A DNA stretch of 64,000 bases from Podarcis melisellensis (lineage: Eukaryota). The DNA is taken from the NCBI GenBank assembly GCA_964234715.1, contig OZ174280.1. One strand, given 5' to 3'. This document shows, piece by piece, positions 39,890 to 62,600 of this stretch (position 1 is the stretch's first letter; every line of letters begins with the position of its first letter). Both the position numbers and the translations under genes were made by a program. The notes under the pieces were generated by a model. That model searched no databases. It had not been told where the DNA came from and saw only the letters and a list, made by a program, of their open reading frames with translations.

Positions 39890-39942
<53 letters not shown>
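39890..39942. repeat. (TA)n microsatellite, target of the Penelope-like insertion
   Basis: Pure TA run; continues at 40574-40590. Confidence 0.97.
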
Positions 39943-39946
<4 letters not shown>

Positions 39947-39994
39947 GGTTTTGGTGTCCTCGGGTGTCTTCCCGTGTAAAAGTTGGGGTGTCTA

Positions 39995-40036
39995 GGCGAC
40001 GTTTCGACGAGGTCTCACTCGTCATCTTCAGGCTGG
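39995..40036 (-). ncRNA. Minimal hammerhead ribozyme motif, mirror copy in the left arm
   Basis: Reverse complement of 40451-40492. Confidence 0.7.
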
Positions 40037-40450
40037 TGCTTTCGGCTTCTTGTTACTGGAACAGAGCAGGATCTCAGTGTTTGAGTTCCTATAAATACTG
40101 TTGAGGGGGTGTGGTGTATAGCCTCCAATGTTCTGGGCAGAGAGGAAGTTCCCAGGCTAGTGTGCCTTTTCTTCTTTTGTTCCTTAATTACTTGAGGGAT
40201 ATCTTGAGTGATTTCTTGCAACTAATCCACACCTAATGACCCACCTAAGTGGTACTCAGGATATCACTCAAGAAATCACTCAAGATATCCCTCAAGTAAT
40301 TAAGGAACAAAAGAAGAAAAGGCACACTAGCCTGGGAACTTCCTCTCTGCCCAGAACATTGGAGGCTATACACCACACCCCCTCAACAGTATTTATAGGA
40401 ACTCAAACACTGAGATCCTGCTCTGTTCCAGTAACAAGAAGCCGAAAGCA

Positions 40451-40492
40451 CCAGCCTGAAGATGACGAGTGAGACCTCGTCGAAACGTCGCC
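40451..40492 (+). ncRNA. Minimal type I hammerhead ribozyme motif (PLE type)
   Basis: CTGAAGA (40456-62), extra T, stem II GACGAG/TGAGAC/CTCGTC, GAAA, palindromic ACGT stem III, GTC cleavage triplet. Stem I is weak (2 clear bp). Confidence 0.7.
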
Positions 40493-40839
40493 TAGACACC
40501 CCAACTTTTACACGGGAAGACACCCGAGGACACCAAAACCTGCATTCCTGTACCCGTGAAAATCTACGAAAGCATATATATATATATATACACATATACA
40601 TTATGGGAGGTTGAGAAATAACAACAAAAACATAGGGCCAAACATTTTTGTTGCTATTTCCTGACCCTACATTCTGGCTGGGCTGGTAAGATTCTGGCAA
40701 GTGGGCATCAGTAACTCTTGAGCAGAGAGGATTCCTTAATAGTGTTATGAGTTTGTGGTGTTTCAAGACTCCCTTTTTAATTTCTGGACCCCCGCTTCTA
40801 GTTCCTGAATCAGACACTAATCAGACACTGGATTTAGCA

Positions 40840-53445: not shown

Positions 53446-54064
53446 TGGCAGGTGGATAATGGTCACTGGATGCATTACCTGGCTAGTCTGGACCATTCTT
53501 TTGAAAAGGGAAATACCTTAGTTCTTGAATCCAGGTCACAGGCCTACCCTGCTCATACACTAAATATGCTCATTTGGGGAGGTTTTTCCAAGATATTCCC
53601 TTCTGCAGAGGAATATTTGGGATCATTAAAAGTCAAAATGGTTTCAGGATTGCTCTCCTGTACTATTTCAGACATATACTTATATACTTATGTATGTGTT
53701 TTTACCTTATGGACTTACGAAAATTCATTTCATCACACCCTAGAATTCTTATAAAACACCTATTGCACACCATCAAATATTTATTTCATCCTATCTTGAA
53801 AGATGGCCCATTCCTTCCTTTGTATTGAGGATTTACTGTGATTTGTTTGCAGAGAGGTTATACATTGTTGCATGAAGCAATTGCTATCTAACACTTTCCA
53901 GTGCATTTCCATCCTTATTGCCTAAAGCCCAGTTTTCTGGGGAAGCAAGTTTGTCACACAAGAGGCCCAAATCAATGCTAATGGTACAATGTGAATTTGA
54001 TGTTTGTCCTTGCTAACAGACAAACACCCGCCTCGTCCCATCTGAAGCAACTCCACACCAAAAG

Positions 54065-54682
54065 TGTGGGATGTAAACACAGGAGCAGTCAATGACAACA
54101 TTCCTAGAGTGTACATGTTAGAACATGGGGAGGGATGTCTGTCCAGCAAGCAGGTAAACTTCCTGGGGACGGACTTCCTCCGCATGTGACCAGAGGTGGG
54201 TGTGGCCTCACCTGTGCAGGTAATGATAAAAGCACAGGGCAGGCAGCCATCTCTCTCTCTTGCCTCTTGCCTCTCTCTTGCCTCTCTCTGCCATCTTCCT
54301 TCCATGAGGAACATCTAAGGATGCTCTCTTGGCTCCCAGCCAAGAGAGGAGATAAGGACTATCTTGCTACAAGATAGATTCTAAATGTATTTTACCTTTT
54401 TAAGTCTGTGTGCCTTCTGGGATCATATTGTGAACAGAACGTGAGTAAACTCTTTTATACTTTTATAAAGACTGTGTAGTGTCTTGTATTTTAAGAGGGA
54501 TCAAAGGGGAAATTACCAGAGTAATTATAGAGGTTCTAGCGAACCTGTGCACACGTTACCGTTGCAAACTAAAAAGGGAATGTTTATAAACTCTGCTGAT
54601 ATTTTGGGAACTTGTTAGCACAAGTTGGATAAGGATATAATTAGTCAATATATCCTCTCCTGCACCCCAGAACATTCCCACA
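54065..54682 (+). repeat. 5' LTR of the Copia element (618 bp)
   Basis: Starts TGTGGGA and ends TCCCACA (7-bp terminal inverted repeat). Matches 59007-59624 at a constant 4942-bp offset; the small ORFs in both copies translate identically. Confidence 0.97.
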
Positions 54683-54684
54683 AA

Positions 54685-54699
54685 GGGTTATGGGCCCAG
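54685..54699 (+). promoter_or_regulatory. Primer-binding site complementary to the anticodon arm of initiator tRNA-Met (half-tRNA primer)
   Basis: GGGTTATGGGCCCAG, 2 nt after the 5' LTR, is the reverse complement of CTGGGCCCATAACCC in metazoan tRNAiMet; same PBS type as Drosophila copia. Confidence 0.92.
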
Positions 54700-54959
54700 T
54701 ATTGCATATTTCTGCGTATTTTTGAAGGATTGCTTTGGATTGTGATTTTGAGTTGAGTAGTATTTTTCTGAGTTAACTTCCTGGTAAGCACATGGTCCTT
54801 TGTTCCATTGTGCAGTGGGGATTAAGCACCCCCCCCTTCCCTCAGAGTTCACAGTGACCCAAGGCAGTGAAGAATTATTTTGAGATTTTTGAGATTTTGA
54901 TTTTAAAATTTTGAGAAATTTTGAAATTTTGAAGAATTTTCAAATTTTTGGATTTTAAG

Positions 54960-57900
54960 ATGGCTAGAGCAGCTTTTGATAGTGATGCAAAGCTAGGAAT
55001 GCCTGTGCTGAATGAACACAATTTCATACACTGGAAGCAGCGCTTGATAGCATGTTTAGATTATAAGCACATTTTGGAAGCTTTAAAGCCTCAGCCTACA
55101 GGATCGTCTGAGGAGGATTTAGCCAAGATAAGTGCTTGGAAACGCATGAACAGCGAAGCTAGACACATAATTTTGAGTGGACTTCGTGATGAGCAGCTAT
55201 CATTAATAAATAGTACAGACGATGCATCTCAAATCTTAAGAGATATTGAGCGCGTGTATGGAGAATCTAGCATAAACTGCTTCAGAAACTTGGTGTGTAA
55301 ATTAACCAGATTGAGGATGAATTCAAAAGAGGAATTCACAGAGCACATCAACAAGTTTACTGAGATTATTCAAAGAATTGATTTGACTCCCAAAGCTTTT
55401 GATGAAGATACAAAGATAGCATTTTTGTTATCATCACTTGGACCACGCTTTAGCGCATTTGTAAGTTTGATGGATCATAGACAAGGTCTGACTTTTAAAG
55501 ACTTGATTGGTTATTTAAAAGAAGAATGCAGAGATAGAGCTGAATCTCCAGTGAGAAATGCTAGAAGCAAAGACAGTAGTTATGCATCTAGGCAATTTAC
55601 AAAGTCGAAAGAGATGCCTAAGAAAGTGATTTGTTTCAATTGTAACAAAGAAGGACACATTGCAAAGAATTGCAGGGCTCCTAAAGCAAAGAAACCCCAC
55701 CCCTTTCAGCCAAAAGGAGAAAAGAAGGGGAAATGTGAATGCACATGGCTACTGCAAGAAAGGAATTTAACAGTCCAGAATCGTGAGAATAGACGTAATA
55801 AATGGATTTTAGATTCAGGTGCCAGTTCACATTTTTCATATAAAAAGGACTATTTTAATGAGATAAATGATGAAGAAGGATCTGAAATTGAGATTGCAGA
55901 TGGCAACATTGTTAAAGCAAAAGGTGCAGGTTCCATGAGTCTGAAATGCAATATAAACAATGAATGCATTGAGAACACAATCTCTAGAGTTTTGTATGTT
56001 CCAGAGCTGAGCTGCAATTTAATTAGCGTGTCCACTTTGGACAAGAAAGGTTTCCAGATCACATTTGGAAATGGAGAATGTAAAGTGACTAGAAATGGCA
56101 AAGTGTTTGCTCAAGCAAAGCTAATCAATGGTGTATATGAGCTTGATCTTTCAGAGGATCAGTCTGCAAAAGTGGCACATTCCAGCCAGAAGGATGAAGC
56201 AGATCTGGACCTATGGCACAGAAGGCTTGGACATAGAGACACCAACGTCATTCTGGATCTACAGAAAAGAGATCTTGTAAGAGGTTTGCAGGTAAAGCAG
56301 AGGAACAAAGCTCCAGCAAAATGCATAAGCTGTATTACTGAGAAGGCTGTAAAACCTTCATTTCCACGTTGTGCAGAACAAAGAAGCAACAAAGTGCTTG
56401 ACATAGTGCACACTGACATATGTGGACCCATGAATGTTCCCTCACTGGGAAAGAATAGATATATTTTAATATTTCTGGATGACTTTTCAAGATTTTGTGT
56501 TGTATATTTCCTCAAAGAGAAGAGTGAGACAGTGGACAAGCTCCAGGAATACATTGCCATGGTCAAGAATAAATTCCAAAGAGCTCCAGCTGTGCTAATG
56601 AGTGACAATGGAGGTGAGTACTGCTCAAATGAAACGCAGGCTCTCCTGGCCAAGGAAGGAATTGCACACGTAACCACAATTCCTTACACACCACAGCAGA
56701 ATGCCATAGCTGAGAGAAAGTTTAGGTCCATTATGGACATGACAAGGTGCATGCTAAAGGATGCATGTTTGCCACAGAAGCTGTGGGCCGAAGGAGTGTA
56801 CACGTCGGTCTATTTGCAGAATAGACTGCCAACTAAAGGTGCAGAGCGCACACCATTTGAACTTTGGCATGGGAAAGCTCCCAATCTTTCGCACATACGT
56901 GTGTTTGGAAGTCCGTGTTACTTCCACGTGCCCAAAGAACACAGACACAAGCTTGACTCCAGGGCAAAAGCAGGTATCCTTGTGGGATATGCCTCTGGAG
57001 GCAAAGGATACAGAATTATGGACTTACAAACTGGTAAGACAAATGCATACCATGCGGTTTATTTTGATGAATATGGAAAAGTAGACACTAAGAACACTGT
57101 TGTGGATTCTTCAGATGAGTCAGAAAGGACTCAAGAGTTTGTATATTTCCCTTTTGAGACCCCACAAAGTAATAATCTGCCTTCGAGTGTTACAGCGCCC
57201 CCTACAGGCAACACACTAGAAGACGCAGAGGACCAGAACCCTGGCGGCACCAGAGACGAAGATGAGGACTCAGATGGGGACATGCCTGCGTTGGAGGAGG
57301 ATGAGGAAGCTGATGCGGTTGCAGAACCAGAGGTCAGACGCTCGTCCAGAACCAACAAAGGTGTCCCACCATTACGGTTGTCCTACTTTGCAGGGTCGGC
57401 GTTTCCACAGGAACCTTCCACTTGGGAAGAGATACAGGAGATGCCAGCTGCAGAAGCCAGTCTCTGGAGGAAGGCCGCGCAGGAGGAGATGGATGCACTG
57501 CATCAGAACAAGACCTGGACACTCACTGAGCTGCCTCCCGGTAAGAAGGCCATTGGCAGTAAATGGGTTTTCAAGGTTAAGAAGGGGTCAGAAGGAGAAG
57601 TGCAGCGCTACAAAGCTAGACTTGTAGCACAGGGATTTTCACAGCGTTTTGGTGAAGACTATGATGAAGTTTTTGCACCAACCGTGAGGTACAGCAGTGT
57701 AAGAATGCTTTTAAGCATTGCAGCCTCCAAGAAAATGAGGGTGAAACACATAGACATTGCTACCGCTTTTCTACATGGGCAGATTTCTGAAGAAATTTAT
57801 ATGAAACAGCCCAAAGGTTTTGTGAAACCACATGAGGCACATTTAGTGTACAAACTCCAGAAAGGACTTTATGGACTTAAACAGGCTGCCAGAGCCTGGA

Positions 57901-58961
57901 ATCAGAAGTTGCATAAAATGCTGACGCAACTTGGGTACAAGCAAGGCGACGCTGACAAGTGCTTGTACAGTAAATCAAATAATGGACAATTCTCATATAT
58001 CCTAGCATTTGTTGATGACCTGATTATTGCCACAGCAAGTGAGAAAGACTATATACAGATAGTAAAACACCTTAGCAAAGAGGTGGAGGTCAAGGAGCTA
58101 GGAGATGTCCAGTACTACCTTGGGATCCAGGTGGAAAGAGAAGAGGACGGCTCATTTCTTCTCAGCCAAAGACAGAAGATCCACGAGCTAATTGAGCACA
58201 TGCAGATGCAAGACGCACATCCAGTTGCTACACCGATGGCTACTGACTTCCTGAAGAATCAGCAGGATTCAAAGCAGTTACCAGACAACAATGACTACAG
58301 GTCGGCGATTGGTAAACTTTTGTATTTAGTTACCACATGTAGACCTGACTTAGCTAATGCTGTGGGGATTCTTAGCAGAAAAGTGAATTCTCCCACTGAG
58401 CATGATTGGGCAGGTGTAAAGAGGGTAGTGCGATATTTGAAGGGTACCATGAATTGTAAATTAAGGTTACCAGCCGTCAGAGACCCTAAGTTGGTTGGGT
58501 ATACTGATGCGGATTGGGCTGGGGATAATGCTGATTATAAATCAACAAGTGGTCATGTTTTCATGTTTGGTGATGGACCTGTTTCATGGGGCAGTTATAA
58601 ACAGAGCTGTGTAGCATTATCTTCCACAGAATCAGAATACGTTGCAGCAACAGAAGCCTGCAGAGAGATCGCCTGGCTTGATCAACTCATAAAGGACTTT
58701 GGGTTGGTGAGAAAAGGGCCTGTCAGCTTGCTGGAGGACAATCAAAGTTGCCTGAAGCTGACGCAGAGTGAGAAGTTCCTGGCCAGAACAAAACACATTG
58801 GGGTTAAATACCACTACATACGCCAGATGATCCAGGATGGACTTGTGGAACTATCCTACTGCAGCACCCAAGAGATGACTGCTGACATCCTGACGAAACC
58901 CCTACCAAGAGAGAGTTTCCAGAATCTACGTGTCAAGCTGGGACTCTGGGTGGTTGAATAA
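54960..58961 (+). CDS. gag-pol: Copia Gag-Pol polyprotein (1333 aa from ATG 54960; the ORF track starts at upstream TTG 54948)
   Basis: Zinc knuckle CFNCNKEGHIAKNC; protease WILDSGASSH; integrase HHCC (LWHRRLGH...CISC), catalytic core (VHTDICGP, SDNGGEY, PQQNAIAER) and GKGY; RT (YKARLVAQGFSQ, LYGLKQ, FVDD); RNase H (GYTDADWAG, SSTESEY, ADILTKPL). No stops or frameshifts. Strong Kozak context AAGATGG. Confidence 0.97.
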   Translation: MARAAFDSDAKLGMPVLNEHNFIHWKQRLIACLDYKHILEALKPQPTGSSEEDLAKISAWKRMNSEARHIILSGLRDEQLSLINSTDDASQILRDIERVYGESSINCFRNLVCKLTRLRMNSKEEFTEHINKFTEIIQRIDLTPKAFDEDTKIAFLLSSLGPRFSAFVSLMDHRQGLTFKDLIGYLKEECRDRAESPVRNARSKDSSYASRQFTKSKEMPKKVICFNCNKEGHIAKNCRAPKAKKPHPFQPKGEKKGKCECTWLLQERNLTVQNRENRRNKWILDSGASSHFSYKKDYFNEINDEEGSEIEIADGNIVKAKGAGSMSLKCNINNECIENTISRVLYVPELSCNLISVSTLDKKGFQITFGNGECKVTRNGKVFAQAKLINGVYELDLSEDQSAKVAHSSQKDEADLDLWHRRLGHRDTNVILDLQKRDLVRGLQVKQRNKAPAKCISCITEKAVKPSFPRCAEQRSNKVLDIVHTDICGPMNVPSLGKNRYILIFLDDFSRFCVVYFLKEKSETVDKLQEYIAMVKNKFQRAPAVLMSDNGGEYCSNETQALLAKEGIAHVTTIPYTPQQNAIAERKFRSIMDMTRCMLKDACLPQKLWAEGVYTSVYLQNRLPTKGAERTPFELWHGKAPNLSHIRVFGSPCYFHVPKEHRHKLDSRAKAGILVGYASGGKGYRIMDLQTGKTNAYHAVYFDEYGKVDTKNTVVDSSDESERTQEFVYFPFETPQSNNLPSSVTAPPTGNTLEDAEDQNPGGTRDEDEDSDGDMPALEEDEEADAVAEPEVRRSSRTNKGVPPLRLSYFAGSAFPQEPSTWEEIQEMPAAEASLWRKAAQEEMDALHQNKTWTLTELPPGKKAIGSKWVFKVKKGSEGEVQRYKARLVAQGFSQRFGEDYDEVFAPTVRYSSVRMLLSIAASKKMRVKHIDIATAFLHGQISEEIYMKQPKGFVKPHEAHLVYKLQKGLYGLKQAARAWNQKLHKMLTQLGYKQGDADKCLYSKSNNGQFSYILAFVDDLIIATASEKDYIQIVKHLSKEVEVKELGDVQYYLGIQVEREEDGSFLLSQRQKIHELIEHMQMQDAHPVATPMATDFLKNQQDSKQLPDNNDYRSAIGKLLYLVTTCRPDLANAVGILSRKVNSPTEHDWAGVKRVVRYLKGTMNCKLRLPAVRDPKLVGYTDADWAGDNADYKSTSGHVFMFGDGPVSWGSYKQSCVALSSTESEYVAATEACREIAWLDQLIKDFGLVRKGPVSLLEDNQSCLKLTQSEKFLARTKHIGVKYHYIRQMIQDGLVELSYCSTQEMTADILTKPLPRESFQNLRVKLGLWVVE

Positions 58962-58995
58962 AGTTGTTTATGTTTTGTATAATGTTGTATTGCCT

Positions 58996-59004
58996 GAGAA
59001 GGGG
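58996..59004 (+). promoter_or_regulatory. Polypurine tract of the Copia element
   Basis: GAGAAGGGG ending 2 nt before the TG start of the 3' LTR. Confidence 0.9.
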
Positions 59005-59006
59005 TA

Positions 59007-59624
59007 TGTGGGATGTAAACACAGGAGCAGTCAATGACAACATTCCTAGAGTGTACATGTTAGAACATGGGGAGGGATGTCTGTCCAGCAAGCAGGTAAA
59101 CTTCCTGGGGACGGACTTCCTCCGCATGTGACCAGAGGTGGGTGTGGCCTCACCTGTGCAGGTAATGATAAAAGCACAGGGCAGGCAGCCATCTCTCTCT
59201 CTTGCCTCTTGCCTCTCTCTTGCCTCTCTCTGCCATCTTCCTTCCATGAGGAACATCTAAGGATGCTCTCTTGGCTCCCAGCCAAGAGAGGAGATAAGGA
59301 CTATCTTGCTACAAGATAGATTCTAAATGTATTTTACCTTTTTAAGTCTGTGTGCCTTCTGGGATCATATTGTGAACAGAACGTGAGTAAACTCTTTTAT
59401 ACTTTTATAAAGACTGTGTAGTGTCTTGTATTTTAAGAGGGATCAAAGGGGAAATTACCAGAGTAATTATAGAGGTTCTAGCGAACCTGTGCACACGTTA
59501 CCGTTGCAAACTAAAAAGGGAATGTTTATAAACTCTGCTGATATTTTGGGAACTTGTTAGCACAAGTTGGATAAGGATATAATTAGTCAATATATCCTCT
59601 CCTGCACCCCAGAACATTCCCACA
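59007..59624 (+). repeat. 3' LTR of the Copia element (618 bp)
   Basis: Direct repeat of 54065-54682, followed by the TSD AAAAG. Confidence 0.97.
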
Positions 59625-62600
59625 AAAAGTGGCCCACTTAACAGAGATAGGAAGCTAAAACTCTAGAACCAGCCTCTGCAACAAACTCTGATGCAAACTC
59701 TGAGCGACATATCTATCTGAGTAAGAGCACCATTATGGACCCAAACAACACCAATCATACCATCGAGGGTTCATTTGCCTGCACATCTTCCATTCAAACT
59801 GAACTGCCTCTACACAATGGGCACAAAACAGATGTTAAAATGATAAAATCTTTTCAATCCCCCTAGTCATTCCATAAGAAACAGATTTGCAAGCCACCAT
59901 ACTTCACCATGATGAATGAGATTTCAGTGGGAAACTACCAAGTTGGGATTCATATGCAGATTTGACACTATCGGATCTGGACTGAATAGAAACTGGGAGT
60001 GGCTAGCTCATGATGTGTTTATTCATCTTGCTTTAGCTTTCCCTTATCACTTGGGGGTGGGTCACTCCCACTCTTACTGAACCTTTTCTCTTTTTCAGTT
60101 GATTGCATTTAACTCTGCATCAGAATGGGGCACACCTATCTCTTGTATTGTGGGCCTGGTCTCAGGGATTTATTTCCTAAAACTCTTCACCCTTCTCTTC
60201 TTCTGACTCTGCTCATGTAACCACCACTCATGTATGTATTGTACTGTAAAAGTGACCTGTGAAAGCTAAAGCTACAAAACCAAGGCTACATACACACAAA
60301 AATCTGCTGCAAGTGTCACTCTACATTCTCCATAGGACAAACCTCCCAGTCACTATGGAGGACAATAAACATCTACAAATCTGCCATTAGAAATGACATG
60401 TAGGAAAACATCTCAAGCACTCAGTACCCTGTCCTTCTGATCTGAAGGTGACAACACCTGAGCAAAGGAATGTCAAAGGGAGGCTCCAATGCGAAACTGC
60501 AAGACAGCTCATCAAGATCTTTTAATTCTATTTAATTAGGCCTGAAGAGCAACAATGAGTTTGGATCACACACTATAGATACTAATTAGCACAGCCTTTT
60601 TAAGTTGATTACTCCATCATCTGTCACTTGTTGTCAAAGGTTACTGTGTTTATTTTGTATACATTCCAAGCTTAATTCAATTTTCACTGGATACTTCCTA
60701 CCTTTTATTTTGTTCTTATTTCACTGCTTACTGTCACACACACCCATACCTGTAAACGGAGTACTTCGTGTATCTGATAAAACTGGAAGCTATTACAGAG
60801 TTTAATTTCTGCTAGCTCTCTTTATATTTTTTTTGTAAACCGCTTTTGGGGCTCGCCTGAAAAGCAGCATATAAATATCTCAAATAAATAATAAAGAAAC
60901 AAACCGTGCACTCCTATGCATGCCTTATTCCCAGGCAAGTGAGTATAGGATTGCTGTCAAAGCCTGCAAGTCTAGATGCTTTACTTTGATGCAATTCTTA
61001 TAATTAGCACACAGTTAATAGGATCTGATTGGGTGATACTGAGCTCTGACTGGGCTGATCCAATATTGCACAAGCAGATGTCCACTCATGTCTTGGGACT
61101 TCCCCTTCTTCTCTTGCCACCCCTTGCTCCCCTCAAAACTGCTCTGGACCCCTTGGAGTAGATTCAGAGGACATGCAAGGGGAGGGGAGTGAAAGGGGAA
61201 GTCCCATTGCATGAGTGGACATCTGCTTGTGCAATATTGGACTGCTTGTGCAATCTGTTCTTCTTCTGCATGGACATGACTGGATACAACCCCAAACCTA
61301 TAGTCATTTGGTTAGGGCTGGGGTTGATGGGAGTTGGCACTGAGTTGCCACAGGAGAAATACGTAGATGGAGGGGTGTGTGTGTGTGTGTGTGTGTGTAC
61401 AAACACACGTATATGATACAGATGGGTACGTATGGGTGTAAACACACAGATCCCATTCATTATCATCATATGGGTTTCATGTACAAATCGCACAAGTATG
61501 TGTGCCTCTTCCACACCCAGCCAGACCTCTCTTTCCTCACCAGGCTGCAGGAGGTTTTGCTTGTAAACAGCAGTCACTTAGTAACACTCTTAATCGGTTG
61601 CCGCTGGACGATTATTCATCCCAGGCTAACCTTAAACCCTGCCCCTTCTCCGCAAGGCACCCTTAGAACAGAGGAAATTCCACAGCTCTGAGGTGATGTG
61701 AAACAAAACATGAGCTGCCATCCCAAGTCCCAGCCAAACTCTCTCTCTCCTCCCTGCCCCCCCTCTCTCTGACACTTTCCAATAAAGCAGGGCTCTCCCT
61801 CTGCATATTCCCCCCTTCCCCCCTTCTTCATCCTTTTCTGGTTTAGGCATTGTAACCCGATAGGCTGGAAATGCAGTTTCTTTCATCTTCCATTTCCCAC
61901 ATCCTGAGAGTCTGGAGAGAAGGAGCCCACCCAGAGAAAGGAATTCCAGGCATGTGGCTTCCTTTCCATCCCCCAACCCCCCATGTGGCTCCATTCACAA
62001 AGCAGATTAGCAATGGCAAGAAGGCCTCCATTGAGCCTCTCCCCACAACTCTTCCCTTCCTCCTCCTCCTCCCCCTCCCACTCCCCCAAAAAAGAGGAGA
62101 GGGGAAAAGCACTCTATAGGAAATATCCCAGGTACAAACTATGCCTTTTCTGTGGCACCAGGGCAAAACTTCTCTGTGGTCCTTCTTCCATCCCCCGAAC
62201 AGAAAACTTGGCTCTTAAACTGGGCTTCCCTCTTTTATCACAAGGAATGGAATTCAGAATTCTTCCTTGGTCTGAAAGAAGCCTGAAAGGCAAATAACAA
62301 GCATTCTTACACACCCAACAAATAATATAGTGGTGGCATCATGATCTATGGGAGATCTCAAGGCATGCAAAAGGGTGGACAACTACAAAGAAGTGCAAGT
62401 CCAGAAAGTTCAAACCACAGCAGCAGTACCAGCAGATAATCACTCTCATGAAAATTACATTGGTTTTTAAGAGCTCAAGCTTAATGCTTGCGCCACCCCC
62501 CACCACAAAAGAAAAAAAGTGCTGTGCATCCATAACTCATGCTGGCCATAGGGAGTTGCGTGTTACCAGCACCAAAAGTGAAAATATGTGGTGGAGAATC

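What the first reader, a model, noticed from the sequence alone, without database searches (positions are those of the whole stretch)
54065..59624. Intact, probably recently active Ty1/Copia retrotransposon in an amniote genome
Seen: LTRs with no differences I could detect over 618 bp, a perfect 5-bp TSD, an uninterrupted 1333-aa ORF with catalytic motifs, PBS and PPT. Established: Copia elements are essentially absent from mammals and birds and are a minor component in squamates. Inference: a very recent, possibly polymorphic insertion of a replication-competent family, perhaps horizontally acquired.
Basis: partly seen in the sequence, partly recalled or inferred. Interest (0 to 1): 0.8.

Follow-up and report, generated by a model that had tools for sequence, protein, structure and literature searches.

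The report
Young intact Copia retrotransposon in lizard
This is a complete, very recently inserted Ty1/Copia jumping gene in a wall-lizard-type genome, missing from the same site in three related lizards, but such elements are already known to be common and active in lizards and snakes, so it is a good example, not a surprise.

Summary
There are two 618-bp LTRs (TG..CA) with 0 differences and a perfect 5-bp target-site duplication (AAAAG). One open 1333-aa gag-PR-INT-RT-RH frame has all catalytic motifs. A 15-nt primer-binding site is complementary to the anticodon arm of initiator tRNA-Met, and a polypurine tract is present.

New here: contigs from three public DNA runs (two coded organisms, three samples) cross the exact empty site, so the insertion is lineage-specific or polymorphic.

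- **Family:** tens of internal copies and hundreds of LTR-like copies, 90-100% alike.
- **Other host:** an open-frame copy, 95.8% identical, sits in Podarcis lilfordi.
- **Selection:** dN/dS between copies is 0.11-0.18.
- **Depth:** an 80%-identical sublineage exists.

This is a long-resident, vertically maintained, probably still active lacertid family. Horizontal acquisition is not supported: the nearest non-lacertid relatives are only 39% (full length) or 52% (RT-RH) identical.

Published work already shows Copia in 23 of 24 squamate genomes, with record copy numbers, polymorphic insertions in Anolis and expression in sea snakes. The RNA evidence here is weak and only at family level. First readers of this scan noted two other apparently intact Copia elements elsewhere in this genome.

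Verdict: real, young and structurally intact, but a new member of a known kind with low to moderate interest.

The parts
54060..54064 (+). 5' copy of the 5-bp target-site duplication AAAAG
   Evidence: only one copy is present in the empty-site contigs (joint 54059->59625, skips 5565)
54065..54682 (+). 5' LTR, 618 bp, TG...CA, terminal inverted repeat TGTGGGA/TCCCACA; TATA-like ATAAAA at 54226; short CT-rich tandem repeat at 54257-54289
   Evidence: 100% identical to the 3' LTR
54685..54699 (+). Primer-binding site. It is an exact 15-nt complement of bases 26-40 (linear count) of initiator tRNA-Met, that is the anticodon stem-loop ('half-tRNA' type)
   Evidence: tRNA sequence as printed in PMC8216282; conserved position in related copies
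54877..54961 (+). A/T-rich degenerate 8-9-nt tandem array (ATTTTGAG)n in the leader, running up to the start codon; role unknown
54960..58961 (+). Single gag-pol ORF, 1333 aa plus stop
55062..55544 (+). Gag (Retrotran_gag_2)
   Evidence: E = 2.5e-20
55632..55673 (+). CCHC zinc knuckle of the nucleocapsid
55803..56054 (+). Aspartic protease region (Pol_BBD; LDSGAS at 55809-55826)
56130..57071 (+). Integrase: gag_pre-integrs zinc region, rve catalytic core (D486, D549, E585) and C-terminal SH3-like domain
57507..58241 (+). Reverse transcriptase (RVT_2; YGLKQ, FVDD)
   Evidence: E = 6e-72
58242..58958 (+). RNase H region (TDADWAG, STESEY, ADILTK motifs). Assigned by motif and position; there is no separate Pfam hit
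   Evidence: aligned full-length with Copia RT-RH proteins at 99% coverage
58996..59004 (+). Polypurine tract GAGAAGGGG, 2 nt before the 3' LTR
59007..59624 (+). 3' LTR, 618 bp, identical to the 5' LTR
59625..59629 (+). 3' copy of the target-site duplication AAAAG

Best explanation
This is an autonomous Ty1/Copia LTR retrotransposon of a family that has long lived in lacertid (Podarcis-type) lizards. This copy integrated very recently and is absent from the same site in related individuals and species. Inferred life cycle: (1) transcription starts in the 5' LTR; (2) the single gag-PR-INT-RT-RH polyprotein is translated and cut by its own aspartic protease; (3) minus-strand DNA synthesis is primed on the PBS by a fragment of initiator tRNA-Met ending in the anticodon arm, as in Drosophila copia and yeast Ty5; (4) plus-strand synthesis is primed at the polypurine tract; (5) the integrase inserts the DNA, making the 5-bp duplication. 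Shown here: the anatomy, the identical LTRs, the empty allele elsewhere, family copy number and divergence, and purifying selection between copies. Inferred: that this copy or its close siblings still transpose, and the primer-processing step.
For: The structure is complete and uninterrupted. LTRs show 0/618 differences, which puts a 95% upper age bound of about 1-3 Myr for substitution rates of 0.8-2.4e-9 per site per year (the rates are taken from memory). In runs X1, X4 and X5, one single-copy-depth contig of about 1.9 kb joins 54059 to 59625 and skips exactly element plus one TSD. That contig accounts for all the depth in the bin that lies wholly in the flank (the last bin, 3' side), and the flanks differ from the window at 4-8 of 386 positions. 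The family is multi-copy. Internal depth is about 10-70x and LTR depth about 300-1100x the single-copy level. Contigs fall 194/198/451 into the >=99, 95-99 and 90-95% likeness bands in X1. P. lilfordi (GCA_947686815.1) carries a 95.8%-identical full-length copy with its own TSD (ACACA), LTRs 98.5% alike and an open 1342-codon frame. Sibling contig L001 is 96.3% identical with an open 1336-aa ORF. dN/dS is 0.11-0.18 between copies. The PBS is an exact 15-nt complement of the tRNAiMet anticodon arm. Literature: Copia is near-universal and abundant in Squamata (PMC11889832), polymorphic in Anolis (PMC7561263) and expressed in sea snakes (PMC8872380).
Against: No direct evidence shows that this copy is transcribed or has produced daughters. 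In RNA run X23, only 260 of 12.8 million reads examined lay on the stretch. About two thirds of those ran on into unlike sequence, fixed variants show they come from other copies, and no start or end pile-ups were seen. The coded organism names prevent saying whether the empty alleles are from the same species (polymorphism) or sister species (lineage-specific fixation). Contigs show presence, not absence, so a filled allele at low frequency in those samples is not excluded. Depth ratios from summed contig depth are not true copy numbers.
Confidence: 0.85

Rival explanations
1. The family reached lacertid lizards recently by horizontal transfer, for example from an arthropod or a nematode parasite, and this copy is part of the burst that followed.
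For: The nearest named relatives of the RT-RH region are invertebrate: Araneus ventricosus 51% and Trichuris muris 50-52%. They fall with the lizard clade in a supported group. No named vertebrate outside Podarcis appeared in two word searches. PMC11889832 leaves open an ancient horizontal origin of Mtanga-clade Copia in Sarcopterygii.
Against: Identities of 39-52% and a path length of about 1.4 substitutions per site to the nearest outsider name no donor. The family has copies 90-100% alike, hundreds of LTR-like copies, a 75%-identical LTR relative in P. lilfordi and an 80%-identical sublineage. dS between copies (0.09-0.11) exceeds the 1-2% flank divergence between hosts, the opposite of the horizontal-transfer signature. 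Vertebrate transposon proteins are rarely annotated, so their absence from the hit list is weak evidence. Copia occur in 23 of 24 squamates (PMC11889832).
Confidence: 0.07
2. The insertion is older than it looks, or is not real: either the LTRs were homogenised by gene conversion, or the element was placed or polished wrongly during assembly.
For: Identical LTRs can arise by conversion, or by consensus polishing with reads from sibling copies. None of the three DNA runs laid here shows the filled junction.
Against: A perfect 5-bp TSD flanks exact TG...CA ends, and the empty site holds exactly one AAAAG. That is the signature of a true integration, not a mis-join. Empty alleles in genomes only 1-2% diverged in the flanks independently bound the age.
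Confidence: 0.04
3. The copy is structurally intact, but the family is now silenced or no longer transposing. On this reading it is a relic of a burst that has just ended.
For: RNA support is thin and ambiguous in strand. The P. lilfordi copy L004 and contigs L001 and L002 carry one extra base inside the PBS, so not all open-frame copies keep the exact tRNA complement.
Against: The zero LTR divergence, the empty sites elsewhere, a perfect PBS in this copy and strong purifying selection between sublineages all fit ongoing or very recent activity. Small 'RNA?' assemblies of two organisms hold 33-39% of the query's words.
Confidence: 0.3

Closest known systems
Squamate Ty1/Copia elements, reported as Mtanga clade (PMC11889832); Copia families of Anolis carolinensis (PMC7561263) and hydrophiine snakes (PMC8872380)
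   Same: Same superfamily and same host order. These elements are also young and multi-copy, with polymorphic or expressed members.
   Different: This lacertid family is not described at family level in the papers I could read; Podarcis genome papers give only LTR class totals. Mtanga membership could not be tested because no reference sequence was available. In my tree, the mosquito sequences fell in the other half.
Drosophila copia and yeast Ty5 ('half-tRNA' priming; Kikuchi et al. 1986 and Ke et al. 1999, as cited in PMC5371799 and PMC7773854)
   Same: The PBS is complementary to the anticodon stem-loop of initiator tRNA-Met, not to its 3' end. There is a single gag-pol ORF and a 5-bp TSD.
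   Different: Protein identity to invertebrate Copia is only about 35-50%. Cleavage of the tRNA primer was not shown here. Several sibling copies carry an extra base within the PBS.
Podarcis lilfordi copy at OX395145.1:11.81 Mb, annotated as 'Retrovirus-related Pol polyprotein from transposon TNT 1-94'
   Same: Same family: 95.8% nucleotide identity, the same LTR ends, a 5-bp TSD and an open frame.
   Different: It lies at a different locus. Its LTRs differ by 5 mismatches and 3 gaps (98.5% alike), so it is older. Its PBS has one extra base. The public gene model covers only 929 aa.

Membership tests
Ty1/Copia (Pseudoviridae-type) LTR retrotransposon | Domain order gag-PR-INT-RT-RH, with integrase upstream of the reverse transcriptase | tested here: met
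   Order of Pfam hits along one ORF
Ty1/Copia (Pseudoviridae-type) LTR retrotransposon | Copia-type reverse transcriptase (RVT_2) and Copia-type gag | tested here: met
   RVT_2 E = 6e-72, full-length profile match; Retrotran_gag_2 E = 2.5e-20
Ty1/Copia (Pseudoviridae-type) LTR retrotransposon | Direct LTRs ending TG...CA, flanked by a 5-bp target-site duplication | tested here: met
   the empty site has a single AAAAG
Ty1/Copia (Pseudoviridae-type) LTR retrotransposon | PBS next to the 5' LTR and PPT next to the 3' LTR | tested here: met
   15/15 complement of tRNAiMet, 2 nt from the LTR; 9-nt purine run 2 nt from the 3' LTR
Ty1/Copia (Pseudoviridae-type) LTR retrotransposon | No env-like ORF | tested here: met
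   Only 45 nt lie between the stop codon and the 3' LTR. No other sense ORF >=100 aa lies outside the polyprotein frame's span
Mtanga clade of Copia | RT/RNase H groups with the Anopheles gambiae Mtanga reference in a tree with reference clades | not testable with these tools
   No reference sequence was obtainable. [quoted passage not shown] Named mosquito hits did not group with the lizard clade, but their clade is unknown.
Half-tRNA-primed Copia elements (copia/Ty5 type) | PBS complementary to the anticodon stem-loop of tRNAiMet | tested here: met
   The reverse complement of 54685-54699 equals bases 26-40 of the tRNAiMet sequence printed in PMC8216282. It rests on the assumption, from the known conservation of vertebrate tRNAiMet, that the lizard tRNA is the same there.
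Half-tRNA-primed Copia elements (copia/Ty5 type) | The primer is an internally cleaved tRNA fragment | not testable with these tools
   Needs biochemical analysis of minus-strand strong-stop DNA
Currently active (transposing) family | Insertions absent from orthologous sites of close relatives | tested here: met
   Empty-site contigs in X1, X4 and X5
Currently active (transposing) family | Sense transcripts of full length | tested here: inconclusive
   Few, mostly partial reads from other copies; library strandedness unknown
Horizontally transferred transposon | Element divergence between hosts far below host neutral divergence, patchy distribution, and a close relative in a distant taxon | tested here: not met
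   Copy dS is 0.09-0.11 against 1-2% flank divergence. The best non-lacertid relatives are 39% (full length) and 52% (RT-RH) identical

The most novel reading that the evidence does not exclude
This Copia lineage entered lacertid lizards by horizontal transfer from a terrestrial invertebrate, after lacertids split from other squamates. The spider, pseudoscorpion and whipworm sequences that cluster nearest would hint at the donor pool. The lineage would then still be spreading, with this insertion segregating in wild populations.
Probability: 0.07. Interest if true: 0.55.

Novelty: new member of a known kind. Interest (0 to 1): 0.25.

Why it matters
It is a clean, fully annotated example of a structurally intact Copia element in an amniote, with direct evidence of an empty orthologous site. 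That makes it useful in three ways. It can serve as a presence/absence marker for wall-lizard population and introgression studies. It anchors family-level annotation of lacertid LTR elements, which genome papers report only as class totals. It gives a vertebrate case of anticodon-arm tRNAiMet priming. It does not change the current picture, in which squamates are the metazoan group richest in Copia copies.

Tried and rejected
- **Exact-protein look-up:** the window's ORF is not on record, so the source assembly could not be named.
- **Organism names:** they are coded in the run tools, so same-species polymorphism and sister-species absence could not be told apart.
- **tRNA in the window:** no tRNA gene is present to check the PBS against. 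I used the tRNAiMet sequence printed in PMC8216282 instead.
- **Ke et al. 1999 (PMC1369817):** not held.
- **Supplements of PMC11889832:** not held, so I could not see whether Podarcis was among its 24 squamates.
- **Surroundings:** no Rfam family at 50-64 kb. No Pfam domain in ten flanking ORFs of 100 aa or more. The insertion therefore sits in DNA with no recognisable coding sequence, and the host-gene context is undetermined.
- **Flank of the 80% relative L002:** no match to lacertid DNA in hand, so its host stays unknown.
- **Findings search by sequence:** blank.
- **RT-RH tree:** most rows are unlabelled contigs, so host-tree congruence could not be tested (quick tree with SH-aLRT support only; P0003 left out because it covers too little of the RT).
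- **RNA evidence:** too thin to claim expression of this copy.
- **Exhaustive representative-protein search:** not run. The word searches already cover high-identity relatives, and that library carries no taxon labels.
Full report
**Observation**

The repeat finder and a direct comparison show two direct repeats at 54065-54682 and 59007-59624. Each is 618 bp, begins TGTGGGA and ends TCCCACA, and the two have no mismatch or gap. The exact match runs 620 bp only because the two bases after the 5' LTR (AA) equal the start of the 3' flank.

The element is flanked by AAAAG on both sides (54060-54064 and 59625-59629).

One ORF runs from ATG 54960 to the stop at 58959-58961, 1333 aa. Pfam finds, in order: Copia gag, a CCHC knuckle, the Pol beta-barrel (protease), the pre-integrase zinc region, the rve core, the SH3-like integrase C-terminus and RVT_2 (E = 6e-72). 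The DSG, D-D-35-E, YGLKQ/FVDD and DADWAG/ESEY motifs are all present.

Only 45 nt separate the stop codon from the 3' LTR, so there is no room for an env gene. A purine run, GAGAAGGGG, ends 2 nt before the 3' LTR. The window holds no other copy or solo LTR.

**Primer-binding site**

Two bases after the 5' LTR lies GGGTTATGGGCCCAG (54685-54699). Its reverse complement is bases 26-40 (linear count) of the initiator tRNA-Met sequence printed in PMC8216282. That covers the 5' strand of the anticodon stem, the loop with CAT, and three bases of the 3' strand.

This is the 'half-tRNA' arrangement known from Drosophila copia and yeast Ty5 (as cited in PMC5371799 and PMC7773854). It agrees with the separate first-reader note s1-494098.

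Among related copies, one P. lilfordi copy (L005) shares the perfect site. L001, L004 and the distant L002 carry one extra base inside it.

**Host and family**

Earlier notes on this genome list vertebrate genes and call it a lizard. The closest proteins are:

| Protein | Identity to the window ORF | Source |
|---|---|---|
| P0001 | 97%, full length | Logan contig |
| P0002 | 97%, fragment | Podarcis lilfordi gene model |
| P0005 | 88%, fragment | Podarcis lilfordi gene model |
| P0004 | 86% | ENA assembly contig |
| P0003 | 78% | ENA assembly contig |

After these the list drops to 39% or less.

The P. lilfordi locus behind P0002 (OX395145.1) holds a full-length copy 95.8% identical to the window's element. 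It has its own 5-bp duplication (ACACA), LTRs 98.5% alike and an open 1342-codon frame. About 5 kb upstream of it lies a 75%-identical LTR-like sequence.

Between copies, dN/dS is 0.11-0.18. dS is 0.089 to the P. lilfordi copy, 0.106 to L001 and 0.67 to L002. The sublineages therefore diverged while under selection for function, that is, while replicating.

**Empty site and copy number**

I laid Logan contigs of three DNA runs on 53900-59850: two samples of coded organism A and one of organism B.

- **Empty allele.** In each run, one contig of 1.86-1.89 kb at single-copy depth joins 54059 to 59625 and skips 5565 bases, exactly the element plus one AAAAG.
- **Flank depth.** That contig accounts for all the depth in the one bin that lies wholly in the flank, the last bin on the 3' side.
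- **Flank divergence.** The flanks differ from the window at 5, 4 and 8 of 386 positions, so none of the three is the window's own haplotype.
- **Filled junction.** None was listed, though contigs cannot prove absence.

The insertion is therefore absent from at least three related genomes whose flanks are only 1-2% diverged. Together with 0/618 LTR differences, this shows a very young, lineage-specific or polymorphic insertion. The 95% upper age bound is about 1-3 Myr for rates of 0.8-2.4e-9 per site per year (rates taken from memory).

Summed contig depth is about 10-70 times single-copy over the internal region and about 300-1100 times over the LTRs. Contigs spread over the >=99, 95-99 and 90-95% likeness bands (194/198/451 in X1). 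These are not true copy numbers. They do indicate tens of internal copies, many more solo or LTR-sharing copies, and both old and young members.

**Expression**

In a raw RNA-seq run of coded organism H, 260 of 12.8 million reads examined lay on the stretch. About two thirds ran on into unlike sequence. Only 25 were 99% alike or better. Fixed differences, such as 8 of 8 reads at 58427, show that they come from other copies. No start or end pile-ups were seen, and the library's strandedness is unknown.

Small assemblies guessed to be RNA, from organisms G and H, hold 33-39% of the query's words. I conclude only that family-level transcripts probably exist. Expression of this copy is not shown.

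**Horizontal transfer**

In the RT-RH region, the best named relatives are a spider (51%), the whipworm Trichuris muris (50-52%), a pseudoscorpion (46%) and mosquitoes (45%).

In a quick maximum-likelihood tree, the lizard clade sits on a long stem (0.72) inside a supported group with the spider, pseudoscorpion and whipworm sequences and many unlabelled contigs. The nearest outsider lies about 1.4 substitutions per site away. That names no donor.

The absence of other named vertebrates is weak evidence, because vertebrate annotation pipelines mask transposons and most hits carry no taxon.

Positive evidence points the other way. The family is deep and diversified within lacertid-type genomes. 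Divergence between copies also exceeds host flank divergence, the opposite of the usual horizontal-transfer signature. An ancient horizontal origin of the squamate Copia lineage is an open hypothesis in the literature (PMC11889832), and nothing here tests it.

**What is already known**

- They were found in 23 of 24 squamate genomes. Squamates hold about two thirds of all metazoan Copia copies counted, all assigned to the Mtanga clade (PMC11889832).
- 1,962 polymorphic Copia insertions are catalogued in Anolis carolinensis (PMC7561263).
- Expanding, expressed Copia subfamilies are reported in hydrophiine snakes (PMC8872380).
- Podarcis genome papers report LTR elements only as a class, 1.4-3.8% of the genome (16.75% for P. 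raffonei by another method), with no family detail.
- First readers of this scan also noted two other apparently intact Copia elements on other pieces of this genome (s1-501844, s1-489308). I did not check these.

**Surroundings**

No Pfam domain was found in ten ORFs of 100 aa or more within about 10 kb. No Rfam family and no tRNA gene is present. The RNA run gave no depth on the 3' flank. The element sits in DNA with no recognisable coding sequence, and I could not tell whether that is an intron.

**Verdict**

This is a real, complete and very young insertion of an autonomous Ty1/Copia element. It belongs to a long-resident and probably still active lacertid family primed by the anticodon arm of tRNAiMet. 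Recent horizontal acquisition is not supported. It is a new member of a well-known kind. Interest is low to moderate, mainly as a marker and annotation anchor.

Noticed in passing
window 54685-54699; L001, L002, L004, L005 (alignment A1): The PBS varies among copies. The window copy and L005 have the exact 15-nt tRNAiMet complement. L001, L004 and the 80%-identical L002 carry one extra base at the same place inside it. This could be an ancestral imperfect PBS that is copied back from the tRNA primer in some replication cycles.
   Followed up: partly
window 54065-54682 and 59007-59624 (read laying bins): LTR bins are about 300-1100 times single-copy depth, against about 10-70 times for the internal region, in three runs. 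This points to many solo LTRs or non-autonomous elements sharing this LTR.
   Followed up: no
window 54877-54961: The leader just upstream of, and running into, the start codon is a degenerate A/T-rich 8-9-nt tandem array (ATTTTGAG)n of about 10 units. Its function is unknown.
   Followed up: no
L004:745-1369 (P. lilfordi OX395145.1): A 75%-identical LTR-like sequence lies about 5 kb upstream of the full-length P. lilfordi copy. It is an older relative of the same LTR lineage.
   Followed up: no
window 54696-56088 (RNA run X23): The RNA reads over gag and PR have the first mate almost only on the + strand. In the common dUTP library design that would mean antisense RNA. The library type is not on record.
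   Followed up: no
window 54065-54655 vs L004/L005: LTRs differ by about 7-14% from the P. lilfordi copies, while the internal region differs by 1-6%. The regulatory region therefore turns over faster than the coding part.
   Followed up: partly
window 39942-40573: Earlier first-reader notes describe an inverted repeat with twin hammerhead ribozyme motifs in (TA)n, about 14 kb upstream. It is unrelated to this element and I did not examine it.
   Followed up: no
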